The notes: generated by a model from the sequence alone, not told the origin. DNA of 64,000 nt from Takakia lepidozioides (GCA_030704615.1 CM060734.1:25544001-25608000), one strand, 5' to 3'. Positions 2,768 to 43,931 are shown, counted from the first letter of the stretch. Program-made: numbers and translations.

Positions 2768-4469
2768 TGCTAATCCCCCCCCCCCCCCACTAGCAAGCCA
2801 TGGAGGCCTAGGGGAGGGTGGGTTGTATTTTTTGTCTTGGGGTTTGGGTGGGATAATTTTGCTTGACAACAGCTGCCCCAAAGTCGCGAGCAGCCCGGGT
2901 GTTGCGCCTAGAGAGTAGGGACTCGATTACTAAAAGCGTGGAGGCAGCCGTGGCCCAGCCACGACGTATGGGAGCGGGGGCCCAGCGCTGACCTTAAGTC
3001 GTACTGAGATCAAGTACATCAGCCGCGTGGCTCAGGCGTGAGGCCCTGAAGCGTGCGAGCAGGGTGCGGGTCTTTACCCGTTGGATAACCAAAAGTTGAG
3101 ACGGACCAGCAGACGCTAGCGTTAACCGCAGCGGTCCACGGTTTGGACCGCTATGCGCGGATCTGCGCCCCGCCACGTGGCGGGGGCGTTTTACCCAGTG
3201 GACAATGCGTCTGCAAATTCCCTTAAAGGGGGGTATTCTTACCTTTAGCTATTAGATTCAATTTATACCCCTCTAAGGGTTAGGAGCCATTATCTAAGGC
3301 GCCAATGGTAGATAAAATCTAGGATTTTGGGAGGACATAGCCTTGGAGGGGAGCGTTCTTAGGACTCCAAGAGAGAGCCAAGCGGCCTGGGAGCAGTGAG
3401 CTAGAGGCGGAGACCTCGAGAGACAAGGGAGGAGAGAAAGTACTTTGTCCTAAAACCTCGGCTACAGTGAGCCTTTGTGTCAGAGCCCAAGGTAGAGGAT
3501 GACTTTTTCCACGGAGGGAAAGCGTACCAGCGCCTTAAAATAATGTAAGGGGGTGAAATCTGGCTTGGACCCACCAGTGGTTATTTTATTATTTACGCAT
3601 GCATGTTCTGGACTAACGAATGTAGTGGCAGGGATGAGCTCTCAGCGAGATTCATTCGTCCGATAGAGCCGCGGCAGTTCCCCGTGGCAGGGAACAGTTC
3701 CTGGGTGTTCCTCGGTTCTCATTGGGTTCCCAAGGGCATCTTTAGGCACCAAGGGTATCTTTGGATTCCCCACATGATTTCCCATAGGGGAGGTTTTTTC
3801 TGATTTTCTTAATTTCTTTTATTTTCCAGCATTTCTGATTTGCGAAATTGCTTAAATAGAATAGATGCACGTGGTGCTCGTTATAGCCTACAGGACGTTG
3901 ATTAAACTGATTGAACTTGTTGAGTTGAGGGGCTTAGAACCACCTTATTGAACTTGGTGAACCTATTGGATGACGATATTCATTTTGGCCACTCCTTTGC
4001 TAAAACAAAGTATTTAGGCACTGGGGTAGGAAGCGTTGGCCCTTCCATTAGAGGTGACTTGAACTCAAGCCCTCGGCGAATGAGGGGCATTGGGAGAGGA
4101 ACAATTTCCCTCTTCTTCCTAGGCTCGGCAGGTGTCTTGTGAAGGGATTAAAACATGTCCCGGCTATAGGCGGCTCGGGGGCCTAGGCGATAGGAATTAG
4201 ACAATAAAACACAAAGACTTGGAAGGCAGTTACTGAGTAGATTGTAGGATACCGTAGAAACGCAAACTCGCCCTGTGAAGAGGAGTACGTGATTTCTCTT
4301 TGCCGGTAGGACTTAGATAGTGATCATAGCCACCATGTACGACCACGGACCCCCCGTACTAACCGCAGTCGGGTAGGCGGTTTAGTGAGCCCAACCTACA
4401 CCGCAACTTACCACGACCCCCCTAGACAACTATGTCGTCACCCTGACCGCGCGCGCTCAGGGCTCGTCA
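2768..4469 (+). mobile_element. Long LTR of a non-chromovirus Ty3/gypsy element (family B, copy 1)
   Basis: Ends ...GGGCTCGTCA followed by a PBS; collinear with the reverse complement of 32401-33935. The 5' boundary is approximate. Confidence 0.8.
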
Positions 4470-4475
4470 TATGAA

Positions 4476-4490
4476 TGGTGCGTCTGCCGG
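4476..4490 (+). promoter_or_regulatory. Primer-binding site complementary to the tRNA-Gly(TCC) 3' end
   Basis: TGGTGCGTCTGCCGG lies 6 nt after the LTR end; plant tRNA-Gly(TCC) ends ...CTCCCGGCAGACGCA-CCA. Confidence 0.85.
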
Positions 4491-4704
4491 AAGGTAAGTG
4501 AATAGTCAGGACTTCTCCAAATTGTTATGGATGGACTAACAATATGTATTCTTGTCCTGATTTGTTTCTATGCAATACTTTACTGTTTATTCATGATCTT
4601 ACTCCATCAGGTGGAGATTGAGGAACCCCATGCACATGAAGATTAGAAGCTCTTACATGAGGGTGTTTGGATCAGTGTTCATTGAAATTACTAACGCCAT
4701 GGCA

Positions 4705-20945: not shown

Positions 20946-20975
20946 CTCGACAAAAGCTTGGCCACAAAAGGTGTT

Positions 20976-21794
20976 TCATACCCAGACTTTGGATTTACAC
21001 AGAAGGTCTGACAGCGGCCCCGTGATCTTGGCGAAATTTCTCACATACTTCCGGTAATAGGAGGCGAGTCCCAGGAAGGATCGCACTCCTGGGACCAAAG
21101 TTGGAGGCTCCCAGTCCAAGATCGCCCTCACCTTTCTGTCATCCATTTTGATCCCATCCTGTGTAATCACATGCCCCAGGAACTCCACTTTTGTGACCCC
21201 GAATTCGCACTTTGAAGCTTTGGCATACAGCTTCCCTTCCCGCAATTTCTGGAACACCCTTTTGAGGTGCTCCAGGTGCTCCTCCTTTGTTTTCGAGTAC
21301 ACCAAGATGTCGTCAATGTACACGATCACAAAGTCATCCAACCACTTCTGAAAAAGGCTGTTCATCAGCGTGCTAAAGGTCGCGGATGTGTTGGTGAGCC
21401 CAAAAGGCATCACCGAGAACTCATATGAACCATACCTTGTCCTGCACGCGGTCTTCTTCTCATCTCCTTCCGCCACTCGGATCTGATGATATCCGGAGCG
21501 CAAATCGATCCGGCTGAAATACTTCGCTCCTGCCAACCGATCGAAGAGGTCGTCGATCCTTGCCAAAGGGTACCGGTTCTTGATAGTCACCTTATTCAGA
21601 GCCCTGTAATCAACACACATCCGCAGCGTCCCATCCTTCTTATCTGCGAATAGCACCGGGGCTCTGTAAGGTGACTTACTCGGCCGGATGTACCCCTTTG
21701 ACATTAGATCCTTGAGCTGAGCCTTCAGCTCGACCAACTCTCTGTGGCTCAACCGGTAGGGCGCCTTGGCAGGAGGCTCCGATCCCGGTATCAC
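20976..21794 (-). pseudogene. Reverse transcriptase of chromovirus pol
   Basis: [18 protein letters not shown] and YIDDIL motifs; bounded by premature stops. Confidence 0.96.
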
Positions 21795-21827
21795 CTCAAT
21801 CTTGTGGTCAACTCCTCTTCACGATGG

Positions 21828-23611
21828 CTAGCCGCTTGGTAAATCCTTCGGCATCACATCCTGATATTTCTCCAAAATCCCCTTGATCCAATCTGGGCTC
21901 GGCTCCCTATCGTCTCCTCCCTTCACTTGTCTTACGTAAAGCAAATACAGGGGCTCGTGTGGCTCCTCCACGGCCCACTCCTTTGCTGACAACAGGTGTA
22001 TTCGCCCTCCCACTGGGTTGGGCGTTTCTGACACTCTTAAAACTTCGCCACCATTCCCACACGGTAGCGTGACTATCCTCTTGCGGCCATCTATGACCGC
22101 TCCGGCTTTGCTCAAAAAAGTCATCCCCAAAATGAGATCCACTCCATCGATCTCGCAAATGGTGAATTTCTCGCGTCCCTCCCAACTCCCGAGCTGAAGA
22201 GGAACATCGAACGCCAACCTCGTCGCCAATTGTGGTTCTCCTTTGGCAGAACGCACTTCAATGGAGGCCCCCACATCACTTGTCGGGAGCCCCAGCTTCC
22301 GTGCCATTGCCGGTGTCATGAAGGAGTGCGACACTCCTGTGTCCACCAACAACGACACATTAGTTCCGGAGATTATCCCACTCACAAACATTAACTGACT
22401 CTTACGCAAGGCGCCAGTTTCCCGATACAACTCACAAGAGTAGTTGCCTAGCTTGCAAGTCTTGGTGACCACCGCCTCTATCAAACGGAAAATGGAATCT
22501 TCGGACAGCTCTGTGGCCGCCCGAGTCATGTTCAATTGTCGGGGTTTTGTGCACTTCTTGGCCATGTGCCCGGGCTCCCTGCAATTAAAGCACACTTCAT
22601 CAAAGGTCGCCTTTTGTTCGCCATAAGCCGTCGCACCTGATTTTCCTTTCGGAACACCGGGTATCGCCTTGGCGTGTGAAGGCCCTCCCTTTGATTTCCA
22701 TATGCCATTGTCGTCGCGTGGCCTATCCCACTTCTTTTCTGGTCGGAAGGAGTCACCCTCCCGCCGAGTCTTCTTGTGGTTCAGCTCCGTGCGGCCTTGT
22801 CTTTCGCCCTAGGGACATCCGAGAAACATTCAGCCCTTTCAATTGCCTCGTTCAAAGTCTTAGGTGGCTTCTCCTTCAACTTCCGCCTGGCCCATGGGGC
22901 CAGTCCCGCCACAAAGTTGAAGACCATTTCTGGTTCTGCCATGTCCGTGACTTTGAGCAACAGCACATTGAAAGCCTGAATATATCCCCGAATGTCATCC
23001 GTTTGCTTCAAATTCCTCATCTTGTCCCGGGCGAGCCAGGACGCATTGAGGGGCACAAACTGTCTCTTCATAAGTTCCTTGAACCCACCCCAGCTCAAGG
23101 TTTCTGTGTTTGGACCTTGGTCGTGAAGGCGTTTCTGCCACCATTGTTGAGCATAGCCCCTCAAATAGGTGGGAGCCACTTCCACCCGATCCTCGTCACT
23201 CAACTTGGCCGCCCGGAAGTACTGCTCTAGCTCCAAGAGCCAGGTGTTGAGTGCCTTCCGATTTTGGATGCCCTCGAAGGTGCCGGGTTCCTTAGGCTTC
23301 ACCTTAAACTTTGTCTTAGTGGAAGTGGCATTAGCTGCCTTCAACACGTCTTTCAACGTCCCGCCAAACTGCGCCAACAACCCTTCCCAAAAGGCTGCTG
23401 GCATGGGAGGCATCTGTTGGTCTGTCGGAGCTCTCAGGAATTCCTCAGGCTCCGACTCCTCAGATTCCTCCTGTTCTTGAGCGGCCTCGCTTCCAAAAGT
23501 ATGCATCGCTTCCTCAAATGGCCGCTTTGGTGACACGTCATCCCCATCGGGCTCACCAAGATCATTATCTTTCGGGCCGTTCCGCTTTCGTTTTGGCTTG
23601 CCCGACCCCAT
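21828..23611 (-). pseudogene. gag (capsid, CCHC knuckle) and aspartic protease
   Basis: EPGTFEG...AQQWW; CFNCREPGHMAKKC; LVDTGVSHSF; premature stop at 22781. Confidence 0.92.
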
Positions 23612-23652
23612 GATGAGGCCGATCCCAAGGACGATCGCGTACTGAACTCTAA

Positions 23653-23664
23653 GCTCTGATACCA
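23653..23664 (-). promoter_or_regulatory. PBS for initiator tRNA-Met
   Basis: TGGTATCAGAGC, 2 nt inside the 5' LTR. Confidence 0.95.
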
Positions 23665-23666
23665 AG

Positions 23667-24391
23667 TGTCGCGCACCTAACTTCGGTAAGCTCCCCTTCA
23701 AGTCATAGTTACTCGCTTTGATGCGCGCGCCTAATTCCCAACTCGGCCGCCGGGCCAACTCAGAGCTTCGGCTGCTCACCGGGACATAACGGTCCCCCTT
23801 TACTCTTCAAAAAGACCCTCCACCAATTTGGGCCTAGTGGAAATTCCCTTTGGTAGATGGCAGTCCAGAATAGCTCCCCACTCCTTGGTTGCTTTCCGGC
23901 TCGCTCGCTTACTCACTAGCTTTTGGTCACCAACGGGCTTGCACCATTCTCGGGGTTACTACTCCTTATATATACTTCTGTGACTGTCCGCGGGGGTTCC
24001 ACAAACAACACCATCCTTTTATGGCGAACCACCACGAAGACCCTCGATTCCCGGTGATGAGTCGCGGTGAGTCTTGGCCTACCCACCACGGCCCCATTGG
24101 ACCGTGATGAGTCCCAAGACTCCCCACGACTCCCACCACAACGTCTCCGCCCCATGGTGAGTCCTATGCCACCCCCACTAAGTCCCACTAAGCTACCACC
24201 ACCCCTTGTGGAGCCACCCCCACCGCAACCCGGTGTGCGGGGCTCCACTTAGTGAGCGCCTCCGCCTCCTTGAGTGCCTTGGGCACTCAAGGGTGTTTCA
24301 GCCCCCCGTACCTATTGCTGCCACGGCCCCCACCACAGGGGCAGCCCCTCTGCGTCCCGACCCTCTGCCCTCAAGGCAAAGGGCCGCGACA
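23667..24391 (-). repeat. 5' LTR of the chromovirus
   Basis: TG..CA ends, adjacent to the PBS, followed by the TSD. Confidence 0.96.
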
Positions 24392-26229
24392 CGGCATGAC
24401 CTCAGAAGGGTCTCGGCGATCTGAGAAGCATTGGTACTCGGATATAGCTCTCTCTGCATGATTCGGCGGAGCCAGTCGCATGAGCACTCGCACGAGGCCG
24501 GCCTTGGCATCAGCGTCGTCTCGGAGCATGGTATTGTCAAGCAAGAATGGATTGAGCAAAGCCCCCGCATAATGTAAGTCCGTTCGAACCATCGAACGAC
24601 AGTCGTAAAATGCATCCTCAGCACTGTCCACAAGTTCAGGTTCCAAGGAGAAGGGAGGATGCCTCAAGGATTGGACGTGCTTTTCAAGATTTTGTATTAG
24701 TAACCATGCCTTGCCCATTACTGGTTGCTTTCTATCAAACTCCCGCAAGACGATTAACACCGGCTCTACCATATAAACAAAGTTTTCACATTTCTTCCAG
24801 AAATCATCGCTGCGAATGCTATTTTGAACTTTTCGACTTTTGCCCAATGACTTGGCTTTTCTGGAGTCCCGCAATGTCGGTGTGTACGCATCCCATTGAG
24901 GATTGATGATGGTGTGCTCCAGACTGTTCTTCACCGTCACCAACCGATCCACCATCAAGAAGTTAGTGACAAAATGAGTTTCGCCTGGATTGCGGAGGCT
25001 GTATTTGGGTTCGTGCCTCCTATATATTGCCAAAGGGATGTGGTGTGTGCGGATGAACGACACAATAGTCTTCGCTCGCTTGACAAGTTGTTTCACCCAT
25101 TGTTCTTTTCCCCAATCTTCCAAAAGGAGGTCAAGGATATGAGCAGCACAACCTTGATAGTACATATGGGGATAACGTGCCAACAATATGTCTGCAATGT
25201 TTATCATGTTAGCGACATTGTCTGTGCATATTTGCATGATTCTATCACTTCCGATCTGTTCGATGAAGTCCGTCAATAGTTGGTATTGAGAACGTTCATC
25301 TTTCTTCTCGCCGCTAGTGTCGACCGATCCCAAAAATTGTTCCCCAGCTGGACATACGAGCATGACATTGAACAACGATATGTTTGTAATAGAACTCCAA
25401 CCATCGGCATATATAGTGCTTTCATATTTTCTGATGCACTCGCCCGTCCTATCGTTGACCTTTTGGGTAAGCTCGGTCATGGCGTCTTCTAGCAATCCTG
25501 TGCGGAGATTGTGATAAGTCAGAGGCACGTACGTGGATCTGGACTCCGAGGTTGCTCTAACGGCAGAAACAAATGCCGGAAGCCTTGTCACATTAAATGG
25601 TATGTTGGCCTCGAAGAAAAACTGCGCCCATTTTTTATCCAACTGTCTTTTCGCAGACAAATTAAGACCTTCCTGCATGGATTGCTGCCGTAATCCTCTA
25701 CTTCGTTGAAGTGGTAGGGGTACAAAGAGGTGTTGAAGCAGATGTTGCTCCGGCACAACCCACTTGTCCAAGGACACCCGAAGCCGCACAATAGTCGCCC
25801 TGGGTACTAATCGGGGCATCCTGACGGGAAGATGGAGTGTTCTGCTGAGAGGTCATGTCCAGATCCAAAGACATTGGAATATTGCCTCCACACTGGGCAA
25901 AGTGGCTTTTTACCTGCATAGATGCTTTAGGGCATAAACCCACCCGAGCGCTCTTCACACCTTTATAGCCGAGGTGAGCGAACAACCGATCCTTACGATA
26001 AGAAAGCTTTAATCCACATAGGTTGCACTCAACACTACCAGTGGCACTGACAGTGTTCGGGATTGCCGTATACCAAGGGCTCCATTCCTCCCTCATCTTC
26101 CCCCTGGGACCTAGCTATGCAAGCAACAAAAAACAGTCACCTATAAATGAACGTGTTGTGAATGTAGAGTGCAATGCGATAGCCCAACACTTCTACATCT
26201 GTCAGCAACCCAAGTGGGTCGATGTGGGT

Positions 26230-27330
26230 TGTAGTGTTGAGCTTATACACAATCTGCTGTCCATTTCTTAATATGGATTTTGGTATGGCTCATAGATGTA
26301 GTGGCTTGTTGATGGGCCTCCCTAGTAAGGGTGGTAAGGAGGTTGCGGACTGGTTTAGGATCGGGAGGGTTGGGGATGGGATGTACCAGCCAGAACGGGT
26401 GGATATGTGCAGTGTGGATAGGGTCGTTGGTGGGGTCGACAAAGGGTTCAAGAGCGCAAGTTTGAGCGAGGAGGTCAGCCTCCTCGTTACCAGCGATGCT
26501 GGTGTGTGAGCGGACTAGCGGATGGGTTGGTCCAGGGATAGAGCAAGAGAGGCTATGGCGGAAATAAGGTTGCGATCCAGATGGTGATGTTGTGAAGAGG
26601 GACAAGAGAGGTGGTTACGAATAAGATAGAGTGATGTAAGACTATCCGTGAAGATATAGTGTGGGGGGGAAAATGAGGGGAGTTGGGAGAGAGCTTCATA
26701 GATGGCCATAAGCTCAGCACGGAGTATGGTGGCAGGTCCAGGGAGTCTGTAAGCCGTGCCCTAGTTTGAGGCAGCATGATACACGCCATAACCGGCGTTG
26801 GATCCTTGAGGGATCCATCAGTATAGTGCGAGTGAAGCAAAGGATATTTAAGGGGCATAAGTTGGTGAGATGGTGGGGGGGGGTGTCCGGTGTAGGTAGG
26901 GGGTTAGGGGAGGGGCGTAGTGGCGCTTTGGCCCAGGCTTTGCTCTTGTTGATTTTGGGATTTGGTCCGGTTGGTGTTTGGACTATGGAGTGGGGAGTAA
27001 GGAGTAGGGTGTAGGTCGGCGGTGATCGTGAGGCCGTGCGTACTTGTGAGTAGATGGCCCAGGCGGGCGCGTATCGTTTGGGATATGGGAGGAGAGGATG
27101 CATGCTGGACATGTAGGAGTAGGGTGAGGGTTGGTTCTGTACGTTGGAGATATTTAGAGAAAAGTGGGTTATAAGAGTATTTAAGTTGGTCTGGCTCAAT
27201 GGAAGCTAGGAGTGTGGTGTCAGGCGGAAGTTATAGTAAGGGGTGGGGGTTGTCCGGGGAGCGCTGGAGGTTAGTATGAGGATAGTAACAGAGTAGGTGA
27301 GGTATGGGCCGTGTGATTGTGGCCAATGAT
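26230..27330 (-). mobile_element. Decayed non-LTR-like retroelement fragment with RNase H (copy 1)
   Basis: HYTDGS, ELMAIYEAL, YIFTDSLTSL and VRSHTSIAGNEEADLLA across frameshifts; upstream region homologous to 37345-37560. Confidence 0.82.
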
Positions 27331-27823: not shown

Positions 27824-28217
27824 GTACGTTCTGTTGCCACCTGCTTGATGTCTTCCTGATGTTTACAAGGTTCTTGGGAGAGTCAGCTTGGTCTTAGCAG
27901 GCCGCGTTTCAATCTCTGCCCGCTCAGCTGCACCGTGGTGGTTCTCACAGACCAATCCGACATTACCTAACTACAGACACAAGCAACACACACAAGAGGT
28001 CCTCTTGGGTTCATGGTCAGTCAAATCCTCCATGGGTTATGACACAAGGTCGAGGACAATGTGGTGAGAGAACCTTCTTCTTTGACCTATTTCAACCTAA
28101 TTTGCCCTCTCATCAGACTCAGCCCTGAATTTGCATATTGAAGTATGTAAGTTAGCTCGTTGGGTGGATCTATGGTGGTTTGGAGTGACTTTGATGTTAC
28201 TGCCGATGTGGTAGCAG

Positions 28218-29853
28218 GAAAGTATCCAAAAACATATAACTGAGATGAGGAGAAGCTTTGGAATGAACACTTTTCCGACCCCGTCAATGGTGGGACAATG
28301 GAGACAAAAAGGTGAATGCCTGTTGGACTACAGAGAGAAGCAGATGCAATTCAGAATTTTGCAAGTTAGCTGGTTGAGTGAACCTTTCATAGTTTGGATT
28401 GACTTTGATATGATACTGCCAATGCGACAACATGAAACTATCCAGAAACAGGTAACAGAGACGAAGAGCTGTGGAATGAATACTTTTTTGACCCCAGTCA
28501 ATGGTGGGACAATCGAGGCAAAAAGGTGAATGCCTGTTGGATTACAGAGAGTAACAGATGCAATTGAGCATATGAACTAGTGTGAGAAGTTGAGTTGGGT
28601 GTTTCCTAGAACAAATGAAGGCTGTCACTGTCAGCTGCTAGCAGCAAGGCAATGATGTATGCATGATTTGTGCAGAGGCAGTGATAGCTGAAGGAACCAA
28701 CCCCAATAAATCGTGGGACAATGGAGACAAAAAGGTGAATGCTCCTTTGATTTTTCTTTATCATTAGTTGTTGTTTTCCCTTGGAGCCTTGGCACTCAAT
28801 CTGGGTATATTGTTCAATCTACTGGTTATTGTAAGGTTTGTGTGGCTTCTTTATGCAGTATCTGCAACTGCCTTCTTTCCTTCTTTCTATATGTCCAAGC
28901 AGCAGCTTGGTGGCTGTCGGTCGGTCTTGGCAGGTCAGATATCTCTCGCTGTTTATTTGCTTGATAGGCTTGGCAGACTCCAGATCTGTCCATGGGTCAT
29001 GAACACAAGGTCAAGGACAATGTGGTAAGGGCACCTTCTTCTTCGATCTATCAGCCTGTTTTGCCCTCTCATCAGACTCGGCCCTGAGATGCATATTGAA
29101 TTCTGTAAGTTAGCTTGTTGGGTGGATCTGTGGTGGTTTGGGGTGACTTTGACAAGTAGGGTTGGGTTGTTTGCTGGAAGAACTTCATGCCGTCAGTGTC
29201 AGCTGCTAGTAGCAAGGCTGGGGATGTATTCATGATTGTACATAGGCAAGGATAGCTGAAGGACCAGGGATAGAGGTCCAGATTCATCCAAGAGGGTTGG
29301 ATTTCAAACAAGTTTAGGGTCTGATTCCCTGTGGATCAGTAGCTACAAGTGGGTACATGGTCAACTGGAAACAGTAGCGGCAATAGCACAATTGGTAGAA
29401 CAAGGCACTGCTAATGAAGGTACCTTCTTCAACACACCTCCCCCCTATTTTTCCCTGCTATCAGAGTTCGTCCCTACATTTTTATGTTGAATTCTGCAAG
29501 TTAGCTCGTTGGTGGATCTATGGTGGGAGAGTTAGCTTGGTCTTAGCAGGCCATGTTTCAATCTCTGCCTGTTTTGCCACAACAGCATCGGCACAATTGA
29601 TAAAATTAGGCACTGCTAATGAAGGCACCTTCTTCAACACATTTCACCCTGTTTTTCCCTCTTATCATAATTGGCCCTAAATTTTCATGTTGAATTCTGC
29701 AAGTTAGCTGGTTGAGTGAACCTTAAACTTCGACATGATACTACCAATGTGACAATAGGAAAGTATCCAGAAACAGGTACCAGAGACGAGGAGAAGCTGT
29801 GGAATGAATACTTTTCTGACCCCAATCAATGGTGGGACAATCGAGGCAAAAAG
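28218..29853 (+). pseudogene. Repeated exons encoding the first half of an OSB-type PDF motif
   Basis: DEEKLWNEYFSDPNQWWDNRGKK|GT at 29759-29853 (intact), 28218-28311, ~28434-28525 and partial ~28700-28734, within a mosaic of duplicated intron modules. Confidence 0.7.
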
Positions 29854-29994
29854 GTGAATGCCTGTTGGATTACAGAGAGTAGCAGACGCAATTCAGCATA
29901 GGAACTAGTGTGATAAGTTGAGTTGGGTGTTTCCTAGAACAAATCTAGGCTATCATTGTCAGCTGCTAGCAGCAAGGCAAGGTTGTATGCATGA

Positions 29995-30488
29995 CCCATG
30001 GTTGTGGGAAACCAATAGGCATCGTTTAGTGCTTGGTTAGAATAACAACATTGAATAAAGCTTTTCACATGATACTCTGGGTTTTCATGTGCTTCCCCGG
30101 AGAACCAAGGCAAATGCTTGGGTAGCGTTAGCGGGGGCAGGCCTGCCGGAACCACAATAGGTACCTCAGGAGGTCCTGGGATATGTGCCATGGTTGACAC
30201 TAACGACGGCGAAGGGCTCCTTGACCTTGCCGGTGGTGTATAAGGGGGACTAGATATAGGGGAAACCACTCGTGAACACTCGATGTCCGAAGAGCTTTCG
30301 GTGTTCTCTCCTTCCCACTCTATCTTATCCAAACTTCTAGTTTCTGAGTCTGAGTCTGGACTTCATGCCGGGTTCTTCCCTAGCAACTGATCTCGGACGG
30401 CTTCTCTAGCCAGTCTTCTTTGCAACCTAGTATCAAAAGATATGCTATCTAGGCTTGGGAGTGTGGCTCTTGATCCTGAGCTAGACAT
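29995..30488 (-). pseudogene. gag N-terminus of the family B element (truncated)
   Basis: ATG at 30488, in-frame stop at 30363; LPKHLPWFSGEAHENPEYHV is a typical retrotransposon gag start. Confidence 0.75.
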
Positions 30489-30547: not shown

Positions 30548-31048
30548 TTACCTTTGAACAACCATGTCAAGAATAAACGAGGTCGGATTCAAATACCTTC
30601 CATGGAACCTTGGCGATGGAGGCACGTCAACGTGCAATCTATGGTTTATTAAGGGATACCCAATTGGCCAAGGTCCCTCACAATGCGAGCACTCAGATCG
30701 GAGTATCAGATGTTGGCTTGCAAAGAACTGGCAATACTCACAGTGGGTAAAGAAATCAACTTGCCACCTTAGGTGGGCTACGAATGATGACCTTGGGTGT
30801 AATGCTCCTAAGTAAATACCTGGACAGGGACAACCCGGAAATACAAATCTATCTGGGCACCAGTAGAAATTCTGAGTGGTGCCGTCGGGCAGAGTTCGGG
30901 TGTTCCAAACTCGTTTGTCGGTCCAACATTTCTTATGCACTTTCTTCTCACCCAAATATCGGATATATTCCTCGATCCTCTCCCGGGGAGACCGTGGTTT
31001 ATGGAAGAACCGATGTTGGATGCGTTCCACTTTTTCATCAAAGGACAT
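30548..31048 (-). CDS. Extra ORF B upstream of gag (Cys/His-rich, 166 aa)
   Basis: Intact ORF between the PBS and gag; paralogous to ORF A. Confidence 0.7.
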   Translation of the reverse strand: MSFDEKVERIQHRFFHKPRSPRERIEEYIRYLGEKKVHKKCWTDKRVWNTRTLPDGTTQNFYWCPDRFVFPGCPCPGIYLGALHPRSSFVAHLRWQVDFFTHCEYCQFFASQHLILRSECSHCEGPWPIGYPLINHRLHVDVPPSPRFHGRYLNPTSFILDMVVQR

Positions 31049-31211
31049 TCCGAATGGGGTTCGACCCTTGCTTAGCAGTGACCCACTTCTGCATTTGTGT
31101 TAGTCATGTCATAAACAAGCATAAGATATAGTGGTGCTGGTTGGTACAATGGTGCTCACCGCACATCACTACCATACTCCTCAGCAATCAAAGCAAATGA
31201 GGTCTGGACCC

Positions 31212-32158
31212 CTATAGTAGGAGTTCCTGGATCAACCATACAAGGTCTCTAATCCGACCCACTAGAACGGCTACTAGTGGCGGGCTCGTCCTCTCCCTCT
31301 TCCGAGGAAGTGTACTTAGTGGGTCCACTCGGGCACTCTCTACTGAGGAGGTGGCATGTACCACTCGGGGCGGTAAACGAGGCAAATATGCCAAAGGAAT
31401 CCATAGGCCAAAAGGGAAAGCTACTGGCTGAACTGGATCTGGTGGGATCGTCCTACGAACTGGAGCAGGTGATGCAACAAAAGAACTCTCTGCTCGGCGG
31501 TCACTAACTGTGTCTAGCAGCGACAGTGAACCAGATGAAATCAACTCACGAATAAGAGCTGCTGACGTGGTCCCTCGGTGATAATACCGGGGTGGTAAGA
31601 ATGGCCGGCAGAACCTCCTCGGATGTGGGAGACTCTCACTCTCGAACCCGTCCTCTCTTGGGCCGACTCCAATCAGCCAATCTACAAAGGCGGGGCGCTG
31701 ACCGCAGATAGCACGTCCTACACACTCTCTCAATGGGGCTGACCGCCTAGCGATCCTGCTGCGCGTGTACAACAGGGTGTTTGTGATGGTGCGACACAAC
31801 GCACAACAAGCCAAGTAGGCCACCTGCCACGCAAGATGGACCTCAAGGGCCGAATCCAAATGAATATAAGCAAGAAAAGGTGGCTGACAATAGCCCGGCC
31901 AACGGGTGTTGAACCGGAAAAACATAGAAATAGGAGCCGTCTGGCTCCGGGGCCTCGGGGTCCAACCCGGGCTAAGATCCGATACCCACGATACTCCTCT
32001 GCAATGGTCAAGATGCGTCGTCGCATTAACGTGCAAATCACTGTGGCCTCGGGGCCAGGTACGTTGCCAGTCCCGATGCTAGAAATGATGCGATAGAGTC
32101 CGATCACCCGGTACTCAAAGGAATGCTCCCGGTGAAGGAACTCCAATGGTGCGGCCAT
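31212..32158 (-). pseudogene. Extra ORF A upstream of gag (one probable frameshift near 31920)
   Basis: N-terminus in ORF 31730-32227 (MAAPLEF...), C-terminus in ORF 31212-32036; shares HLxWQV..CxxC with ORF B. Confidence 0.65.
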
Positions 32159-32376
32159 ACTGCCACTCAAAAGTCTCCATGAGGTTAACAACATGCACCC
32201 CAAAGTGATAAATGTGTCTAAAAGCACTTAAATATTCCCTTGGCCCTTTCCTGCCGGAGACAAAAGATACAGAACAATAAACGTTAGATAAAGTGAAAGA
32301 ACAAGATCCAGGAAGAGAATGATAGGCGTCCACTCTTCTTCCATCCAAGGTGCGGAGAGCCTGACTATTCACTTAT

Positions 32377-32394
32377 CTCCCGGCAGACGCACCA
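32377..32394 (-). promoter_or_regulatory. PBS, 18-nt complement of tRNA-Gly(TCC)
   Basis: TGGTGCGTCTGCCGGGAG, 6 nt after the LTR end. Confidence 0.9.
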
Positions 32395-32400
32395 TTTATA

Positions 32401-33935
32401 TGACGAGCCCTGGTCGCGTGTGGCCAGGGTGACGACATACTAGCCTAAGGGGATCGAGGTAAGTTGCGGTGTAGGTTGGGCTTGATGAACCGCCTACCCG
32501 GCTGCGGTTAGTGCAAGGGGTCCGTGGAATGTTACTGGGGGTGATCGATGATTTCTAATTTCTACCGGCAAAGCAGGGTTTAGCAACTCTACTTCACAGG
32601 GCAAGTTTGCGTTTTCTAAGTCCTACGGGATTTCTACGTTTTATCAAGTAACTGCCTTCCAAGTCTTAGAGCCGCTTCTCCCACTGCCCCTTCTTCCCCG
32701 AGTGCTTGAGTTCAAATCACCCTCGGGAAGGGACCAATCCTCTCTCCCCCGAAGTTCTCTCTTAACTTCAAGGGACAAGAATCACTAAGCAATGTCAAAC
32801 AGATAAGGTGAAAAGTTCAATAAGTTTCCAACTACACCTCTCAAGTGTTCCTATTCCAAAAAGTTCAAACAAGTGCGGCAATCCTAATTGAGGAATTTCC
32901 CTCCACCAAAATAACAGGAAATGATAAAAAATACAATATTCCAGAAAAATACGTCCCTAATAGAGGCTCATGCAGAGTCTCCAGAGGTGCCAAGACACGC
33001 CCACTGGGGAACCCCCTGGGAACTCAATGGAACCCCGGGAACGCCCGAGATCCGTTCCCCCTTCGCGGGGAATTGCCGCCTCTTCTGCGGATGAACAGAA
33101 GTCGTCGGGTCGGACTCCGCTGCACATTCGTTAGTTGCAAAACGGGCTGTCGCCCCTCCTAAGACATTCCAGGGGTGGGACCAACCCTAGTTTCAACCCC
33201 CCTATATTACCACCAGCACCTTTCCTTCATGGAAAGCGTCATCTTCTACCCTTGGCTCTGACACGTGGGGTCACTTTAGCCATAAAACACAGACATAGTA
33301 CTTTTGGTTTGCTCTTGTCTCTAGCTACTTCTCTCTCTAACTCTCGTTCCTAGAGCCTCCTCCGGCTCTCCCTGGGCTTATCTGATTGGCCTTCCCAGCG
33401 GCCTTCTCCTCTCCAAAGCATGCAATTTTCTCACCAATAGATCACCCAAACCAGCCCCTTTCCCTTGAGAGGGGTCAACAAAAAAAGAAATAGTTGAGGG
33501 TCCAGAATACCCCCCTTAAACAAATGCCATCCGCTGTAACCGCGGGTCAAAGAAGCCCCAGCGAGGGCCTTGCGGGCCGGATAATAGCGCTGTCGCTTCG
33601 GATAAATACGGAGACCGCCGGTCCACAGGCCGGAGCTTTACCCAGCGGTTCATAACTCAGATTTGGCACGTGGCTGTTTTCGCCCCCGCGTGCTGGCCAC
33701 GCAGCCCGTCCTTTTGTGCACGTACGACTAGGGTCAGCGCCCCGCCTTCTCAGCGCCGAGGCGTGGGGCCGCGGCTGCTCCGTTGGGTCCCTGGCTCCCG
33801 GGCGCACCAGTCGGGGCTTTCCCGCACTGCTGGCGACCCGTGGGCAGCTCCTACACTCCAAAAAACTAGGGCCCAAAAAAATACAAACCTCTCTCCCCCC
33901 TTCCTTGTATTCAAGGTCCCTTAGTGGGGTAGCTA
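32401..33935 (-). mobile_element. 5' LTR of the family B element (copy 2)
   Basis: Diverged homologue of 2768-4469; ends GGGCTCGTCA next to the PBS. The outer boundary is approximate. Confidence 0.8.
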
Positions 33936-35110: not shown

Positions 35111-36834
35111 GTCTTCCATATGCCATGGCCGGAAAAATAAAACCTAATCTTAATTGCCAACAATCAACAAGCACCCTGCATAATTCTCTCTTCTTTTCAA
35201 TGTCTCCAAATTCATCCCCTAATTTGTGCCTAAACCATAATACAAGTAATAAGTATGTATCTTTACCTATACCTCTACTAATTGATTGTAATGGCAGTAT
35301 CCTAATCTGTCTCAAAGATTAATCCTCATCATTATATCATGTAACACATAACTAAAAGAGAATCATAATAAGTGGGGTCAGAGTGTACTTACTTGTAGTA
35401 GCCAAATGACAAAAGCTGGTGGGTCCCGACTCTTGTGAAGACTTGCTGATACAGAGCACAAAGCTTGGCAGGAGCGCAGGCCAAGCGCACTATAGTTGTC
35501 AAAGTACTAGATCTGGTGGGTCCCGGCAAGTGTGAAGAGCAAGTAGTTCTACATGACCATGAAGAGAGCCTGGCATGAGCACCCTCTAGCAGGTCCGAGT
35601 ATGAAGAGATTGTGAGTGTGATGAGCCTGGCACAAGCAAAGAGTGTGGCGGTCCCGGCAAGCAATGTGCACAACCTTCACAGCAGGTAGATTAAGAGACA
35701 TGGTCACCTGCTACAACAAGTCAAAAGCGATTACCGATTATAGGCCATGAACTCTGCGCGTAATTCCCAGGTATTGCGCTTACCAATGTCGGTCACCGAT
35801 ATCTGGGCGCCGGCGAAAATTAACGCATGGAAGCATGTCGTCATTTTTGCCATCTAGTGCCAACTTGGCCGATTGCCGGGACATGGAAGTTGTCCCTACG
35901 GCCATGGAGCGGAGAGGAGAGGAGAGGCCCGCAGGTGAAAGGGGAGGGGCCGGGCCCGCCGTATCAACATCCGTGGAGCCGCTTAAGAACCGGGCAATTG
36001 GCCTTGATGTGGCAAGTGCCATGATAGGAGTGGCACATAATATTGAGGAGCTCTTCTTTAATCATCATCGTGATGAAGGAGTTGTCGCGTGTCAGAAGCT
36101 TGATGGAAGGTGGAATGATGCTCGCCTCGAGCATCATGATTACTACTCTAGGCACACCAATATCCTTAAACATGGGGAGCTCCTTTGCATGGACATCAGC
36201 GTCAAACAATGAATCAAAGACGTTCCTACATCCAAGAGAGAGAAGACTCCGGCTGAAGCCAGCGTACAACTAAGAGCCACTTCACCTTTTGGCTATTGCC
36301 CCCTTTCGGGGGTGGGCCCTATGAGAGAACATATGTACTGTAGGACACCAAGTAACCGGGGGTATAGAAATATTTACGGTAACATAGGGTCGTAGGATTG
36401 GACTGGTTAATCGGCGGAAGTCATACATGCCAGTCTTGGAAGACCCCCTCTCCTCACCCTGTCATGCCACATGTCATGTCCAGTCTTCTCCACGTATTGT
36501 CCTGGGATTAATCTGCGGAAGTCGTATATGCCAGTCGTGAAGACCCTCTCGCCTTCCCTGCATTGTCGTGACACGTGGCATATCCCTTCTATTCCACGTG
36601 AAGCTGACATGGATTAGCAGTCATGTATTGCGGTCTTATCTATGACTATGATTAGGCGTCCCCGTTGCCACGTCAACAGTGAGCACCACGATTGGCAGAT
36701 ACGATTCTATGGCGCTTACGACTCATTTGTCACAACTGACTGGGTGTATCTGACTGGGCAGTCATGCAGTCATAAAAGGATGATACGACTGGAAAATTGT
36801 TGACCTAAAAGCCAGGATTTGTTGTAGTGGGTTG

Positions 36835-37881
36835 ACAATGGCTATAATGAGGTTGCGGTCTGGGTGATGATGGTGGGAGCAGGGAGATGTGATTCCGGAT
36901 AAGAAAGAGTGAGGTAAGACTATATGTAAAGATGTAGTATGGAGGAGGAAATGCATCTATCAGGGAGAGTGCTTCGAAAATGGCCATAAGTTCAACACAT
37001 AATATGGTGGCAGGGCCAGGAAATATGAGGGCGGTGCCCCGGTTAGTGGAAGCGTGGTATACTCCGTAACTGGCATTAGATATGGTGAGGGAGCCGTCGG
37101 TATAGTGGGAGTTAGATGGGGGGTATCTGAGGGGGATAGCCTGTCGATATAAGAAGGGGATAGGGGGTGTGGATATTGCGGGATGGCCTGGGAGGGGCGC
37201 GACAACGCCCTTAACCATGCTTTGTTTGGTTTAATTAAGGGGGAATGATACTAGTGTATGGTTACAGGACGAGGTGGGTGAGCGGTGGCTGTTTGGGTGT
37301 AGGGTGGTAGCCTTCACTTTGTGCGTCATGGTTAATAGGTGGTTTCAGTGATTCAGGAAGGGTATTGATATATTGATGGGGGAGGAGTGTTGGACATGTA
37401 AAATTAGGGTTAGAGTGGGTTCCCTCTGGCGGAGGTATTTGGGGAGGGGTGGGATATGCACGTATTTAAGCTGGTTTGGTTTGATTGTGGCTAGTAAATT
37501 AACCCCTGTCGGGAGGCGTAGAAGAGGATGGGAGTCGTTAGGTGATTTTTGTTGTGTGAATATGAGTATTGTGAGGGCATAGGGGGAGGAGTGAGCGGCG
37601 AAGCGTGCCCATTGGAGAGCTTCATGAGCGGAGGTACCAGGGGGAGGGTGGGCAAGGCCTCTGCCAGCCCAGGTGTGCTGAGTGGCAGTACCTGTGGCTC
37701 CGAAGATGCAATCCATGTGGTGTGGGCTTGCAAATGTAGTTAATTCCATAGGGCATATAAGCGGGCTGGAGTAGTATGAATGAGTGAGTTGGAATGAGTT
37801 GATGAGTAGTGCAAGAATGTCCTGGGGTATAGTGTTATGAGAGCATGCCGTTGCCAGTCTATTGAGGGTACGTGGTTAGCT

Positions 37882-40061: not shown

Positions 40062-40974
40062 CCGCAGAGGCAACTCCGAATCTGAGGATGGTGCCTTTTG
40101 TTGAGAGGGGAAAGCATGGGGGGGAGAGGGGTAGCTCACATACCAAGAGTGATGTAGCTGTAGCTGAGAAGAATGGGGGGAATGTGTGCCTGCATTAGTG
40201 TTGAATTGGTTTGATGAGCTCCTTGCAGCACTGGAGTCAGCCATCTTCGGTTGGTGCCACTCAACACGAGCCTCATCGCTCTCTAGCCTTTTCATTGTAC
40301 TTCGTCGGCCGCCACTAGCAACCTTAAGCCGCTGATGAGCCTCCACGCTGTTGAGGCGCCATAGCACAGGGCATCTGGGAACGGTATGGATTCTGCCGTT
40401 AATCTGGTTCCAAAGGGGGCTCGGTGTTGGCTGGAACAGAGTGGCCGGTGGAATCCGTTGCGCCGGGGATCTCGTGCACAACTCCAGCCTTTGCACGCAC
40501 ATGATGTGGTGTGTTGTAGGGATAGATTCGTCCGTGAAAAATCGCACTAGGGTTGATATGTTTCTTGTGCTGGTCAGTTTGGGATTCCAGGAGTGGGGGC
40601 TGGTTTGGGCGGCACTGAGAAGTAGCAAACTGAGCAAAACTTATACAGGTAAAGAGATGGAATGAGAGACCTGCATCCACCTTGTGGTGGGGATTAGTCA
40701 GTAAAATCGACTCTAAAAACGTCAAGAGAGAGAGCTTAAAAGATGCGCAAGGGGATGAGTGTAAGAGGTAATGTCAGAACGAGAGATGAAACGGCGAGAG
40801 CGCCTTGTGAAGGCACCATGGGCAAGCGCAGGAGCTATGGCGGCTGCCATGGCTAACTGTAGAGAGTTGGACAAAGTAGCGATACTGCTAAACAAGAGAA
40901 CTAAGATGAGAAGATTAAGAATTTGGCGGAACCCTATACAGTTAGTCATAGCTAAAAGTGTTACTAAGTCACAG

Positions 40975-41651
40975 TGTCGCGCACCTCACTTTGGTAAACT
41001 CCCCTTCAAGTCATAGTACTCGCTTTGATGCGCGCGCCTAACTCCCAAACTGGCCGCCGGGCCAACTCGGAGCTTCGGCTGCTCACCGTGGCATAACAGT
41101 CCCCCTTGCGCCTCCAAAAGACCCTCCACCACTTTGGGCCTAGTGGAAATTCTCTTTAGTAGATGGCAGTCCGGAATAGCTCCCCACACCTTGGTCGCTT
41201 TCCGGCTCGCACGCTTACTCACTAGCTTCTGGTCACCAACGGGCTTGCACCGTTCTCGGGGTTACTACTCCCTATACATACTTCTGTAGGTGTCCAGGGG
41301 GGTTTCACAAACAACACAGTCTTTTTATGGTGAACCACCACGAAGACCCTCAACCTTCTGTGGTGAGTCGCGGTGAGTCTTGGCCCACCCACCACGGCCC
41401 CAATGGACCGCGATGAGTCCCAAGACTCCCTACGACTCCCACCACAAGGCCTCAGCCTCGTGGTGAGTCCTATGCCACCCCCATTACGACTCTCTAAGCT
41501 ACCACCACCCCTCGTGGAGCCCCCACCACCGCAACCCGGTTTACGGGGCTCCACCTAGTAAGCGCCTCCGCCACCTTGAGTGTCGAAGGCACTCAAGGGT
41601 GCTTCAGCCCCCCTTTCCTATTTGTTGCCGCTGCCCCCACCACAGGGGCAG
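40975..41651 (-). mobile_element. Older chromovirus LTR interrupted by a second copy of the same family
   Basis: TGTCGCGCACC start; more diverged; lacks the last ~50 bp where the next LTR begins. Confidence 0.9.
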
Positions 41652-43931
41652 TGTCGCGCACCTCACTTCGGTAAGCTCCCCTTCAAGTCATAGTTACTTG
41701 CTTTGATGCGCGCGCCTAACTCCCAAACTGGCCGCCCGGCCAACTCGGAGCTTCAGCTGCTCACCGGGACATAACGGTCCCCCTTTGCTCCTCCACAAGA
41801 CCCTCTCTCAATTTGGGCCTAGTGGAAATTCCCTTTGGTTGTTGGCAGTCCGGAACAGCTCCCCACACCTTGGTCGCTTTCCGGCTCGCACGCTTACTCA
41901 CTGGTTTTTGGTCACCAACGGGCTTGCACCGTTCTCGGGGTTACTACTCCCTATATATACTTCTGTGACTGTCCGCGGGGGTTTCACAAACAACCCAGTC
42001 ATTTTATGGCGAACCACCACGAAAACCCTCGATTCCCGGTGATGAGTTGCGGTGAGTCTTGGCCCACCCACCACGGCCCCATTGGGCCGTGATGAGTCCC
42101 AAGACTCCCCACGACTCCCACCACAAGGTTTCCGCCCCATGGTGAGTCCTATGCCACCCCCACTAAAACCCACTAAGCTACCACCACCCCTCGTGGAACC
42201 ACCCCCACCGCAACCCGGTGTGCGGGCTCCACCTAGTGAGCGCCTCCGCCTCCTTGAGTGCCTTGGGCACTCAAGGGTGCTTCGGCCCCCGTACCTATTG
42301 TTGCCACTACCCCCACCACAGGGGCAGCCCCTCTTGTGTCCTGACCCCCTGCCCTCAAGGCAAAGGGCCGCGACACACACCCTACCAACAGGGAGTCGAT
42401 GTCCTCATCGACTTGTCCATTTTGTAGAAACAAACATCCAAGTTGTGGCGTCCCACATCAAGGAGTTTGTTTCCGTACCATGGTGTCCCATGGCAAAGAA
42501 CCAAACCCCCACTTGACTCTACTCTCCACTAGCTAGTTTGGCCGACTTCCTCCAAGTCCCGGCCAAGGGTGGAGCCTCTCCAGCTCCACCCAGTGCACTC
42601 TTCTTGGCCCACTTCAAGGCCAAGGAACGATCCTCCCCGAGGATTGAATCGCCTTACTGCAACAACATTGCTTGCGATCGCACATGATACCGCTTTTGGC
42701 ATCACCTTGAGCAAGGATTCACCTTGAACCCTTTTTGACTAGGAAGACAACCTTGAACCAACCGCGCGCCCCAATCGCTACAATTGGGTCTGCCTTGGAA
42801 TGCTGGCCTGAGATACGGGAACACGCCGAAGCCGCACTACAACTTCGTCCCGAGGTTACACGATTATAGTACGTGAATGGAAGCACGTTGCTTCCGCGTT
42901 AATCCGCACTACAAGACAACCCCCTCGGTAGCACAGTTATAGTACGCGTACGCGCCAGGTGCGCACTAGCACGTGAACTCCCAAAGAAGGCGCAAGTTTT
43001 CCTTGCCCTTTGGATGGGAGTCACCCGATTTCGGCATTGCGCAAACACACGATTAATCCAATTCACCTCTCCCACTTTTGTAAGCTAGCATGCATTCTAC
43101 ACATTAGCCAACCATACCATGCATCACCATTCCAAACAAAATAGGAAGCACAACATTTGGAAACCATTTCATTTATAACAAAATTTGTACAACACAAGTT
43201 TTTGCAATCGGATAACTGAGCTAGCTAAGCCGGCTAAGCATGTATTTCCTCTCCCACGATCCAAGGTTGATGTCCCCATCAACGCTTCTTCCGCTTTTGA
43301 GGTCGCCCTTCGAAAGTTGCAACCGCCTTGGATGCGTTTCCCATTTCTGAGACACGCACCTAAGTTGCCTCCACTTGATGATAGCCCTTCCATTTCACGA
43401 GATACTCCATTTCTGGATTCTTGAACCTCCTTGACTTAAGCACTGCCTCCACCTCGTACTCAGGCTCATTTTCATGATCCAACAGCACAGGTGGCCGATG
43501 CAACACTTGATGCTGATTCGGACGCGCTTCATCTTTGAAGTAAGGCTTCAAAAGGGAGACGTGGAATGCCGGATGCACCTTGCTGTTTGCCGGCAGCTCC
43601 AATTCATATACATCCTCATTCATAACCTTCCGGATGCGGAAGGGCCCCGCATACGGAGGTACGAACTTCGGACTCACTTCCGGAGGTAGTCGAAAATTCT
43701 TGATGTTCAACCAGACCTCTGTGCCTGCCTCAAACTTAACTTCCCTCCGCTTCCGATTCGTCTGCCGTTCATACCGTTTCCTAGCTTTGGCAATGTTGTA
43801 CTTTGTGAGCTTCAACAAACGCTCGCGTTCTTCCAGCACCGCTGCTGCTGCCGGTTCCTCAACGTCTTGGGCAGCCCAACTTGTCGGCACCATAGGTGCT
43901 TTTCCATAGACCAATACAAAAGGGGAAACTC
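41652..43931 (-). mobile_element. 3' part of a second chromovirus copy (integrase C-terminus, chromodomain, 3' UTR, LTR 41652-42375)
   Basis: Collinear with 17434-19706; abruptly truncated at VSPFVLVYG. Confidence 0.95.

What the first reader, a model, noticed from the sequence alone, without database searches (positions are those of the whole stretch)
30548..32158. Two tandem paralogous Cys/His accessory ORFs between the PBS and gag of a tRNA-Gly-primed LTR retrotransposon
Seen: about 1.9 kb separates the PBS (32377) from gag (30488) and holds two sense-strand ORFs that align without gaps. ORF A reads CQPPFLAYIHLDSALEVHLAWQVAYLACCALC and ORF B reads CPGIYLGALHPRSSFVAHLRWQVDFFTHCEYC, giving C-x3-[FY]L-x2-[IL]H-x2-S-x4-HLxWQV-x5-CxxC. 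Further matches are SFE/SFD, EEY, EC..C, WLIG/WPIG and PHPRRF/PPSPRF. Known: Ogre/Tat elements carry one 5' extra ORF of unknown function. Inference: this is an old duplicated, probably metal-binding domain that I do not recognise, conserved at the protein level. It is a candidate accessory or anti-silencing factor.
Basis: partly seen in the sequence, partly recalled or inferred. Interest (0 to 1): 0.85.

Follow-up and report, generated by a model that had tools for sequence, protein, structure and literature searches.

The report
Two related orphan ORFs in retrotransposon leader
A dead, truncated plant LTR retrotransposon carries two ORFs between its primer-binding site and its gag remnant; they share a short Cys/His-containing block that is real but has no known relatives, making this one more orphan "extra ORF" whose function cannot be settled here.

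Summary
The core observation holds. On the minus strand an ~1.5 kb LTR ends at an 18-nt tRNA-type PBS (32394-32377). A 1.9 kb leader follows, with ORF A (32036-31212, 274 aa) and ORF B (31048-30548, 166 aa).

The two ORFs share a gapless block of 52-56 residues:
- BLASTP E 2e-6; SW 73, reached by 0 of 2000 shuffles, p about 1.6e-5.
- The match appears only in the ORF frames. DNA similarity is nil and codon position 3 identity is 25%.
- Both ORFs are longer than dinucleotide shuffles allow (P 0.0005 each).

The element is a broken 5' fragment. Its gag is weakly supported, has an in-frame stop and is cut at ~29995. There is no pol and no 3' LTR.

The only other family copy in the window (2810-4535, +) loses homology about 25 nt after its PBS.

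Nothing related turned up in Pfam, NCBIfam, PDB, 1.84 billion protein representatives, or the metagenome, viral and prokaryote scans. AlphaFold gave no confident fold.

Best reading: an old tandem duplication of a lineage-specific 5' extra ORF. Metal binding is plausible but untested, and anti-silencing has no support. Conservation across copies could not be tested.

The parts
32395..33905 (-). 5' LTR, about 1.5 kb. The outer boundary is approximate and the exact 3' end is not defined because there is no partner LTR.
   Evidence: Homology to a second, diverged copy at about 2810-4475 (+). It is patchy, reaching 79% near the PBS.
32377..32394 (-). Primer-binding site TGGTGCGTCTGCCGGGAG, complementary to a tRNA 3' end ...CTCCCGGCAGACGCACCA. 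The assignment to plant tRNA-Gly(UCC) is from memory.
   Evidence: Sequence read. There are exactly two matches in the window, both directly after the related LTRs, against 0.06 expected. The matching 5' acceptor half GCGTCTGTAGTCCAACGGT is an abundant wheat small RNA.
32355..32376 (-). Block conserved between the two family copies just 3' of the PBS. It reads GAG|ATAAGT here and AAG|GTAAGT (a 5' splice-site consensus) in copy 2. Homology between the copies fades after it.
   Evidence: Alignment.
31730..32227 (-).
   Evidence: Its similarity to the ORF B N-terminus is not significant (p 0.27).
31212..32036 (-). ORF A, 274 aa from a TTG (288 codons stop to stop). The first ATG is at residue 38. 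The tail is rich in Pro, Ser and Arg.
   Evidence: Length exceeds dinucleotide shuffles, P 0.0005. No Pfam, NCBIfam or protein-database relatives.
31734..31901 (-). Shared block in ORF A (56 codons). The core is CQPPFLAYIHLDSALEVHLAWQVAYLACCALC at 31889-31794.
30548..31048 (-). ORF B, 166 aa with an ATG start (183 codons stop to stop). The N-terminus is basic. It contains CxxC-x13-CxxC (CEYC...CSHC).
   Evidence: Length exceeds shuffles, P 0.0005. No relatives.
30671..30838 (-). Shared block in ORF B (56 codons). The core is CPGIYLGALHPRSSFVAHLRWQVDFFTHCEYC at 30826-30731.
29995..30488 (-). Putative gag N-terminus. It has an ATG at 30488 and an in-frame stop at 30365-30363, and is cut at about 29995 just before the point where a Retrotrans_gag domain would begin.
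   Evidence: Frame reading. Weak match to the pre-domain segment of the gag ORF at 50927-51814 (E 0.076). No Pfam hit. The junction with repeat cluster 27875-29994 is shown.
2810..4535 (+). Second, diverged copy of the same LTR family, with an identical 15-nt PBS core (4476-4490). Clear homology ends about 25 nt after the PBS, and an integrase C-terminal fragment follows at 4618-5073.
4508..4570 (+). Possible remnant in copy 2 of the ORF B segment just upstream of the shared block. RTSPNCYGWTNNMYSCPDLFL is compared with ORF B residues 50-69.
   Evidence: Identity is 11/21. tblastn E is 0.69 window-wide and the direct shuffle test gives p 4e-4. The DNA alignment is poor. Weak evidence.

Best explanation
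The 1.9 kb between the PBS and the gag remnant of this LTR retrotransposon fragment is, or recently was, protein-coding leader sequence. It holds two lineage-specific sense 'extra ORFs' that descend from one ancestral ORF by an old tandem duplication of about 1 kb.

What survives of the homology is a block of 32-56 residues, C-x3-[FY]L-x2-[IL]H-x2-S-x4-HLxWQV-x5-CxxC. Synonymous positions and the flanks have diverged to randomness, so the block was kept by selection on a protein.

Inferred, not shown:
- The proteins would be translated from the full-length element RNA ahead of gag, or from an alternatively processed RNA.
- They would act as small Cys/His-rich accessory proteins of the element that bind zinc and then nucleic acid or protein.

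The copy in this window is a dead 5' fragment and does nothing now.
For: - A/B similarity: BLASTP E 2e-6; SW 73, 0 of 2000 shuffles, p 1.6e-5.
- The pair ranks 49th of 7543 ORF pairs. Most pairs ranked above it, and several just below, lie in DNA repeats or Pfam-supported pol ORFs.
- The signal appears in one frame pairing only.
- There is no DNA-level similarity (p 0.76-0.96), dS is saturated and dN is 0.6-0.9.
- Codon-position identity in the core is 62/50/25%.
- Sense ORFs of 288, 183 and 165 codons compare with a shuffle mean of 111 for the longest, P 0.0005 for the first and for the second. The longest antisense ORF is 126 codons, within expectation.
- The ORFs have the same orientation as the PBS and the gag remnant.
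- Five Cys/His positions are conserved, and ORF B has CxxC-x13-CxxC.
- Orphan extra ORFs are common in plant LTR retrotransposons: 314 mutually dissimilar groups in Ty3/gypsy, of which only 21% have a known domain (PMC6317226).
Against: - No relative was found anywhere.
- AlphaFold gave pLDDT 34 and 38, so no fold.
- Codon usage of both ORFs scores about 0, like non-coding control ORFs, against 0.12-0.23 for pol ORFs. One real gag ORF also scores about 0.
- ORF A has no ATG ahead of residue 38, and its supposed N-terminus is in another frame.
- The flanking matches are not significant.
- ORF B's second CxxC is not conserved in ORF A.
- The only other family copy in the window lacks the region.
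- With a window-wide Bonferroni correction over all ORF pairs, the Gumbel p becomes about 0.12. The significance therefore leans on the two ORFs being neighbours.
Confidence: 0.5

Rival explanations
1. The A/B segment is not a canonical part of the element family. It would be host or foreign sequence captured into the leader of this copy or sub-lineage (transduction, or an old insertion of an unknown repeat), itself holding a duplicated coding fragment.
For: Clear homology between the two family copies stops about 25 nt after the PBS. Gene capture by plant LTR retrotransposons is documented and usually affects one or a few copies (PMC7264820).
Against: - Copy 2 is itself rearranged: an integrase C-terminus follows about 100 nt after its PBS. 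Its lack of the region is therefore uninformative.
- It may keep a 21-residue remnant of ORF B.
- No terminal inverted or direct repeats bracket the segment.
- No host or transposon protein resembles it in 1.84 billion representatives.
Confidence: 0.2
2. Chance: two fortuitous ORFs in a non-coding leader that happen to share Cys, His and Trp positions. There would be no homology and no protein.
For: - Corrected for all 7543 ORF pairs, p is about 0.12.
- Codon usage is not coding-like.
- There are no relatives and no predicted fold.
- The extra motifs are not significant.
Against: - No pair that I could identify as unrelated scores as high in the window.
- The two ORFs are immediate neighbours on the same strand, so the fair number of tests is about 100, not 7500.
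- Independently, both ORFs are far longer than shuffles allow.
Confidence: 0.15
3. The ORFs are decayed pieces of one long, internally repeated N-terminal extension of Gag rather than separate accessory genes.
For: ORF A and the gag remnant are in the same frame. Another element in the window has a 227-residue extension ahead of its Retrotrans_gag domain.
Against: ORF B is in a different frame. The ORF A frame has about 20 stops across the ORF B region, and all frames are closed between A and B and between B and gag.
Confidence: 0.1

Closest known systems
Sense extra ORFs in the 5' part of plant Ty3/gypsy elements (eORF-5'F of Neumann et al. 2019, e.g. Ogre ORF1)
   Same: The position (between the 5' LTR/PBS and gag) and the sense orientation match. 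So do the lack of any known function and the lack of similarity to other proteins, which is the rule for such ORFs (PMC6317226; PMC7264820).
   Different: - There are two tandem paralogous ORFs instead of one.
- They are much shorter than Ogre ORF1, and ORF B is below the 250-codon criterion of that survey.
- No plant mobile domain, Transposase_28 or Athila ORF-1 domain is present.
- The PBS type is not among those listed for plant lineages in that paper.
- The lineage cannot be assigned because pol is missing.
Integrase N-terminal HHCC zinc-binding domain (Pfam Integrase_H2C2 / zf-H2C2)
   Same: The order of conserved ligands, H...H...CxxC, is the same. hhalign places the CxxC of the block on the integrase CxxC.
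   Different: The spacing is H-x7-H-x10-C-x2-C, against roughly H-x3-7-H-x23-32-C-x2-C (the latter from memory). There is no Pfam hit at E up to 1, and hhalign probability is 0.2%. It is not a member.
Accessory proteins of retroelements encoded outside gag-pol, such as CERV of C. elegans Cer1
   Same: A small element-encoded protein with no relatives outside its lineage. CERV is needed for export of unspliced genomic RNA (PMC10309623). It shows what such an ORF could do.
   Different: There is no sequence relation. CERV comes from a spliced mRNA and has experimental support, whereas nothing is known about expression of ORF A or ORF B.

Membership tests
LTR retrotransposon 5' sense extra ORF (eORF-5'F) | Lies inside an LTR retrotransposon, between the 5' LTR/PBS and the polyprotein, on the same strand | tested here: met
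   An LTR shared with a second copy and an 18-nt PBS lie upstream. A gag-like remnant lies downstream in sense, but it is weakly supported (E 0.076).
LTR retrotransposon 5' sense extra ORF (eORF-5'F) | ORF of at least 250 codons that is not made of tandem repeats (operational criterion of PMC6317226) | tested here: inconclusive
   ORF A has 274/288 codons and meets it. ORF B has 166/183 codons and does not. There are no tandem repeats in the leader.
LTR retrotransposon 5' sense extra ORF (eORF-5'F) | Present in all or most copies of the family, as opposed to a one-off capture | tested here: inconclusive
   Only one other copy is available. It is rearranged and lacks the region, apart from a doubtful 21-residue remnant. 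No plant genome collection is reachable with these tools.
Ogre/Tat lineage extra ORF | Tat-type polyprotein with the additional archaeal-type RNase H domain | not testable with these tools
   The element is cut inside gag at about 29995, and no pol of this element is in the window.
Ogre/Tat lineage extra ORF | Extra-ORF domain typical of the lineage: plant mobile domain PF10536 in Ogre, Transposase_28 in Retand | tested here: not met
   No Pfam family at E up to 1 for ORF A, ORF B or the overlapping ORF.
Integrase-type HHCC zinc finger | Match to the Pfam models Integrase_H2C2 / zf-H2C2, and their ligand spacing | tested here: not met
   There is no Pfam hit, while the same scan finds both models in the neighbouring element. 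hhalign probability is 0.2%, and the spacing H-x7-H-x10-CxxC is too short.
Gag CCHC zinc knuckle | C-x2-C-x4-H-x4-C motif / Pfam zf-CCHC | tested here: not met
   The motif is absent from both ORFs and there is no Pfam hit.
Any solved zinc-binding fold (e.g. C1 domain) | Significant sequence match to a solved structure, or a confident predicted fold | tested here: not met
   The best PDB match is the Vav C1 region at E 0.22, and ORF B alone gives E 1.2. The models have pLDDT 34 and 38, too poor for a fold search.

The most novel reading that the evidence does not exclude
ORF A and ORF B would represent an undescribed family of small zinc-binding accessory proteins (conserved C-H-H-CxxC). They would be encoded in tandem in the leader of a plant LTR-retrotransposon lineage primed by tRNA-Gly, and expressed with the help of a retrovirus-like splice donor just 3' of the PBS. 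They would serve the element's RNA export, translation or packaging, or counter host silencing.
Probability: 0.1. Interest if true: 0.7.

Novelty: new member of a known kind. Interest (0 to 1): 0.3.

Why it matters
Extra ORFs of plant LTR retrotransposons are numerous, and almost none has a known function. A pair of paralogues inside one leader gives an internal comparison: here it shows protein-level constraint without needing other genomes.

If the block proves conserved across copies and binds zinc, it would be a tractable candidate for an element-encoded regulator. As it stands, this copy is a dead fragment and the finding adds one more orphan extra ORF to a long list.

Tried and rejected
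Searches that found nothing:
- Pfam (E up to 1) and NCBIfam on ORF A, ORF B and the overlapping ORF.
- Pfam on the antisense and LTR ORFs.
- The search for homologous proteins with ORF B, ORF A and the gag remnant.
- Exhaustive phmmer of ORF B against 1.84 billion representatives. The single hit, P0001, is a translated tandem repeat of about 55 residues matched in 11 stretches. I reject it as spurious.
- Exact look-ups of ORF B, the hAT ORF and eight other window ORFs. None is in the collection, so the source genome's ORFs are not represented there, and blanks say little about same-genome copies.
- DNA pattern scans for the LTR-end/PBS in metagenome and viral contigs.
- Protein-pattern scans with the A/B alignment in metagenome, viral and prokaryote genome contigs.
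- PDB sequence searches: best E 0.22.
- Rfam on the whole window.
- The bacterial promoter/terminator scan, which is irrelevant here and at background level.
- A literature search for tRNA-Gly-primed plant elements.

Analyses that gave no usable result:
- AlphaFold on ORF B alone and on the two-row alignment gave pLDDT 34 and 38. I ran no fold search because such models give meaningless matches.
- The codon-usage discriminant trained on Pfam-supported ORFs of the window does not separate ORF A or B from non-coding control ORFs.
- An 18-nt direct repeat encoding IAEEY (31988-32005 and 31171-31188) is out of register with the duplicated block. I take it as chance.

Ideas rejected:
- Integrase HHCC origin.
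- One continuous Gag extension.

Full report
**What is there**

Read on the minus strand, the region has five parts.
- An LTR of about 1.5 kb, roughly 33905-32395.
- An 18-nt primer-binding site, TGGTGCGTCTGCCGGGAG, at 32394-32377.
- A 1.9 kb leader.
- A short gag-like reading frame starting at the ATG at 30488.
- A break at about 29995.

The LTR is recognised because a second, diverged copy lies on the plus strand at about 2810-4475. That copy is followed by the same PBS core at 4476-4490. Identity is patchy and reaches 79% over the last 300 nt. The PBS core occurs exactly twice in the window, at these two places, against 0.06 expected.

The PBS is the complement of a tRNA 3' end. From memory it is plant nuclear tRNA-Gly(UCC), and no tool here could confirm the isotype. 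The matching 5' acceptor half is an abundant small RNA in wheat.

I take the contig for a plant, not human. It contains chromovirus-type Ty3/gypsy elements, a hAT transposase with DUF659 and a DUF2921 gene fragment.

**State of the element**

This copy is a dead 5' fragment.
- The gag-like frame (30488 to about 29995) has an in-frame stop at 30365-30363.
- It has no Pfam hit.
- It matches another gag ORF of the window (50927-51814) only weakly, E 0.076. The match does fall on the segment directly ahead of that ORF's Retrotrans_gag domain.
- At about 29995 it runs into a cluster of unrelated 200-300-bp repeats at 27875-29994.
- No pol and no 3' LTR of this element are in the window.

The lineage (Ogre/Tat or other) and the age of the copy therefore cannot be determined.

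**The two ORFs**

ORF A is 32036-31212: 274 aa from a TTG, 288 codons stop to stop, with the first ATG at residue 38. ORF B is 31048-30548: 166 aa from an ATG, 183 codons stop to stop.

- BLASTP gives 15/52 identities, E 2e-6.
- Smith-Waterman gives 73, against a shuffle mean of 32 and a maximum of 61. None of 2000 shuffles reaches it, and the Gumbel p is 1.6e-5.
- Of the nine frame pairings of the two DNA segments, only the ORF frames score (73 against 22-30).
- At the DNA level there is no detectable similarity, p 0.76-0.96.
- In the 32-codon core, identity is 62%, 50% and 25% at codon positions 1, 2 and 3.
- dS is saturated and dN is 0.6-0.9.

The codon-position pattern alone would also arise from an alignment chosen on amino-acid score. 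What matters is the significant protein score combined with random DNA. If the two blocks are homologous, they have been kept as protein.

As an empirical control I scored all 7543 non-overlapping pairs of ORFs of at least 100 codons in the window. The A/B pair ranks 49th. Most pairs above it, and several just below, down to a score of about 55, lie in DNA repeats or Pfam-supported pol ORFs identified. I did not check every one. A strict Bonferroni correction over all pairs gives about 0.12. For neighbouring same-strand ORFs the correction is about a hundredfold smaller.

**What does not hold**

The N-terminal parts give p 0.27 and the C-terminal parts p 0.52.

SFE and EEY of 'ORF A' lie in a different frame, the 165-aa ORF at 32227-31730, which overlaps ORF A by about 300 nt.

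The shared domain is the 32-56-residue block only. Its conserved putative ligands are C-x8-H-x7-H-x10-C-x2-C. ORF B adds a second CxxC 13 residues on. ORF A has C-x5-C after 23 residues instead.

**Evidence for coding beyond the similarity**

The sense strand of the leader has ORFs of 288, 183 and 165 codons. Dinucleotide shuffles give a mean longest ORF of 111, with P 0.0005 for the longest and for the second longest. The antisense strand has nothing unusual, its longest ORF being 126 codons.

A codon-usage score trained on Pfam-supported ORFs of the window does not help. ORF A and ORF B score about 0. Non-coding control ORFs also score about 0, and so does one true gag ORF. The pol ORFs score 0.12-0.23.

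**The other family copy**

In copy 2, clear homology continues for about 25 nt past the PBS and then fades. An integrase C-terminal fragment starts about 100 nt later, so copy 2 is itself rearranged. It has no ORF A or ORF B.

Immediately after its PBS, at 4508-4570, it encodes RTSPNCYGWTNNMYSCPDLFL. This resembles ORF B residues 50-69, just upstream of the shared block. Identity is 11/21, the window-wide tblastn E is 0.69, and a direct shuffle test gives p 4e-4. The DNA alignment is poor. I treat this as a hint, not as evidence.

**Search for relatives**

Nothing was found.
- Pfam and NCBIfam.
- The word-indexed protein search with ORF B, ORF A and the gag remnant.
- The exhaustive phmmer search of 1.84 billion representatives. 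Its one hit is a translated tandem repeat, which I reject.
- PDB sequences: best E 0.22, to the Cys-rich C1 region of Vav.
- DNA and protein-pattern scans of metagenome, viral and prokaryote contigs.

A caveat applies. None of ten ORFs of this window, including clear pol ORFs, is in the protein collection. The blanks therefore exclude a conserved, annotated protein family. They do not exclude other copies in the same or related plant genomes, and no plant genome collection is reachable with these tools.

AlphaFold gave pLDDT 34 for ORF B alone and 38 for the block with the two-row alignment. I therefore ran no fold search.

**Interpretation**

The best-supported reading is an old tandem duplication, with a period of about 1.06 kb, of a lineage-specific sense extra ORF in the leader of an LTR retrotransposon.

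This is a known kind of feature. A survey of plant elements found extra ORFs in thousands of Ty3/gypsy elements. They fall into 314 mutually dissimilar groups, and only 21% have any known domain (PMC6317226). Their functions are unknown (PMC7264820).

Status of each step:
- Shown: the homology of the block, its protein-level character, and the unusual ORF lengths.
- Inferred: that the proteins are made, that the conserved Cys/His bind zinc, and that they serve the element.
- Without support: anti-silencing.

An HHCC ligand order like that of integrase N-terminal domains was considered and rejected, on spacing, on the absence of a Pfam hit and on an hhalign probability of 0.2%.

The rivals are capture of foreign sequence into this copy's leader, plain chance, and a decayed Gag extension. 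They are listed with their tests in the Rival explanations section.

**Limits and omitted steps**

The decisive test is conservation and dN/dS across natural copies, and it could not be run. The breaks are only described.

Noticed in passing
window 17434-24392 (-), with 16832-17443 and 24371-26096: A near-complete chromovirus-type Ty3/gypsy element. Its LTR pair is 96-98% identical (17434-18159 and 23667-24392), and its gag, protease, RT and RNaseH-integrase ORFs are split into four pieces. It sits inside a hAT transposon: the DUF659 part lies at 24371-25819 and the hAT dimerisation part at 16832-17443.
   Followed up: partly
window 4491-4499 (+) and 32371-32379 (-): Directly 3' of the PBS, copy 2 reads AAG|GTAAGT, a perfect 5' splice-site consensus, inside the only leader block conserved between the two copies. 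Copy 1 reads GAG|ATAAGT at the same place. This is the position of the major splice donor in retroviruses, and could mean the leader ORFs and gag use differently spliced RNAs.
   Followed up: no
window 4508-4570 (+): A short peptide after the PBS of copy 2 resembles ORF B residues 50-69. Identity is 11/21, the direct shuffle test gives p 4e-4, and the window-wide E is 0.69. It may be a remnant of an ORF B-like gene in a diverged family member.
   Followed up: partly
window 49773-51814 (+): Another Ty3/gypsy element has an unannotated 229-aa sense ORF (49773-50462) upstream of its gag ORF. That gag ORF itself has 227 residues ahead of the Retrotrans_gag domain. Long 5' coding or extension regions thus seem common in this genome, with no similarity to ORF A or B.
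   Followed up: partly
window 9913-13861 and 14850-16265: Four tandem copies of a unit of about 1 kb that carries 186-aa ORFs without Pfam hits, followed by an array of 51-bp repeats.
   Followed up: no
window 40973-43940: Further LTR copies and a partial internal region (integrase SH3 plus chromodomain ORF at 43360-43935) of the same family as the element at 17434-24392, at 91-94% identity.
   Followed up: no
window 26243-26858 (-) and 36808-37230 (-): Two related (72%) RNase H-like fragments with the motif HTSIAGNEEADLLAQ. The Pfam RNase_H match is weak (E 0.16). They are probably remains of a non-LTR retrotransposon.
   Followed up: no
window 410-895 (+): An ORF with a DUF2921 (transmembrane E3 ligase-type) domain, probably an exon or fragment of a host gene. 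It is consistent with a plant source.
   Followed up: no
window 31171-31188 and 31988-32005 (-): A 16/18-nt direct repeat that encodes IAEEY in both places, upstream of ORF B and upstream of the ORF A block. It is out of register with the duplicated block (spacing 817 against 1063 nt). It is probably chance, but could be a trace of the duplication.
   Followed up: partly
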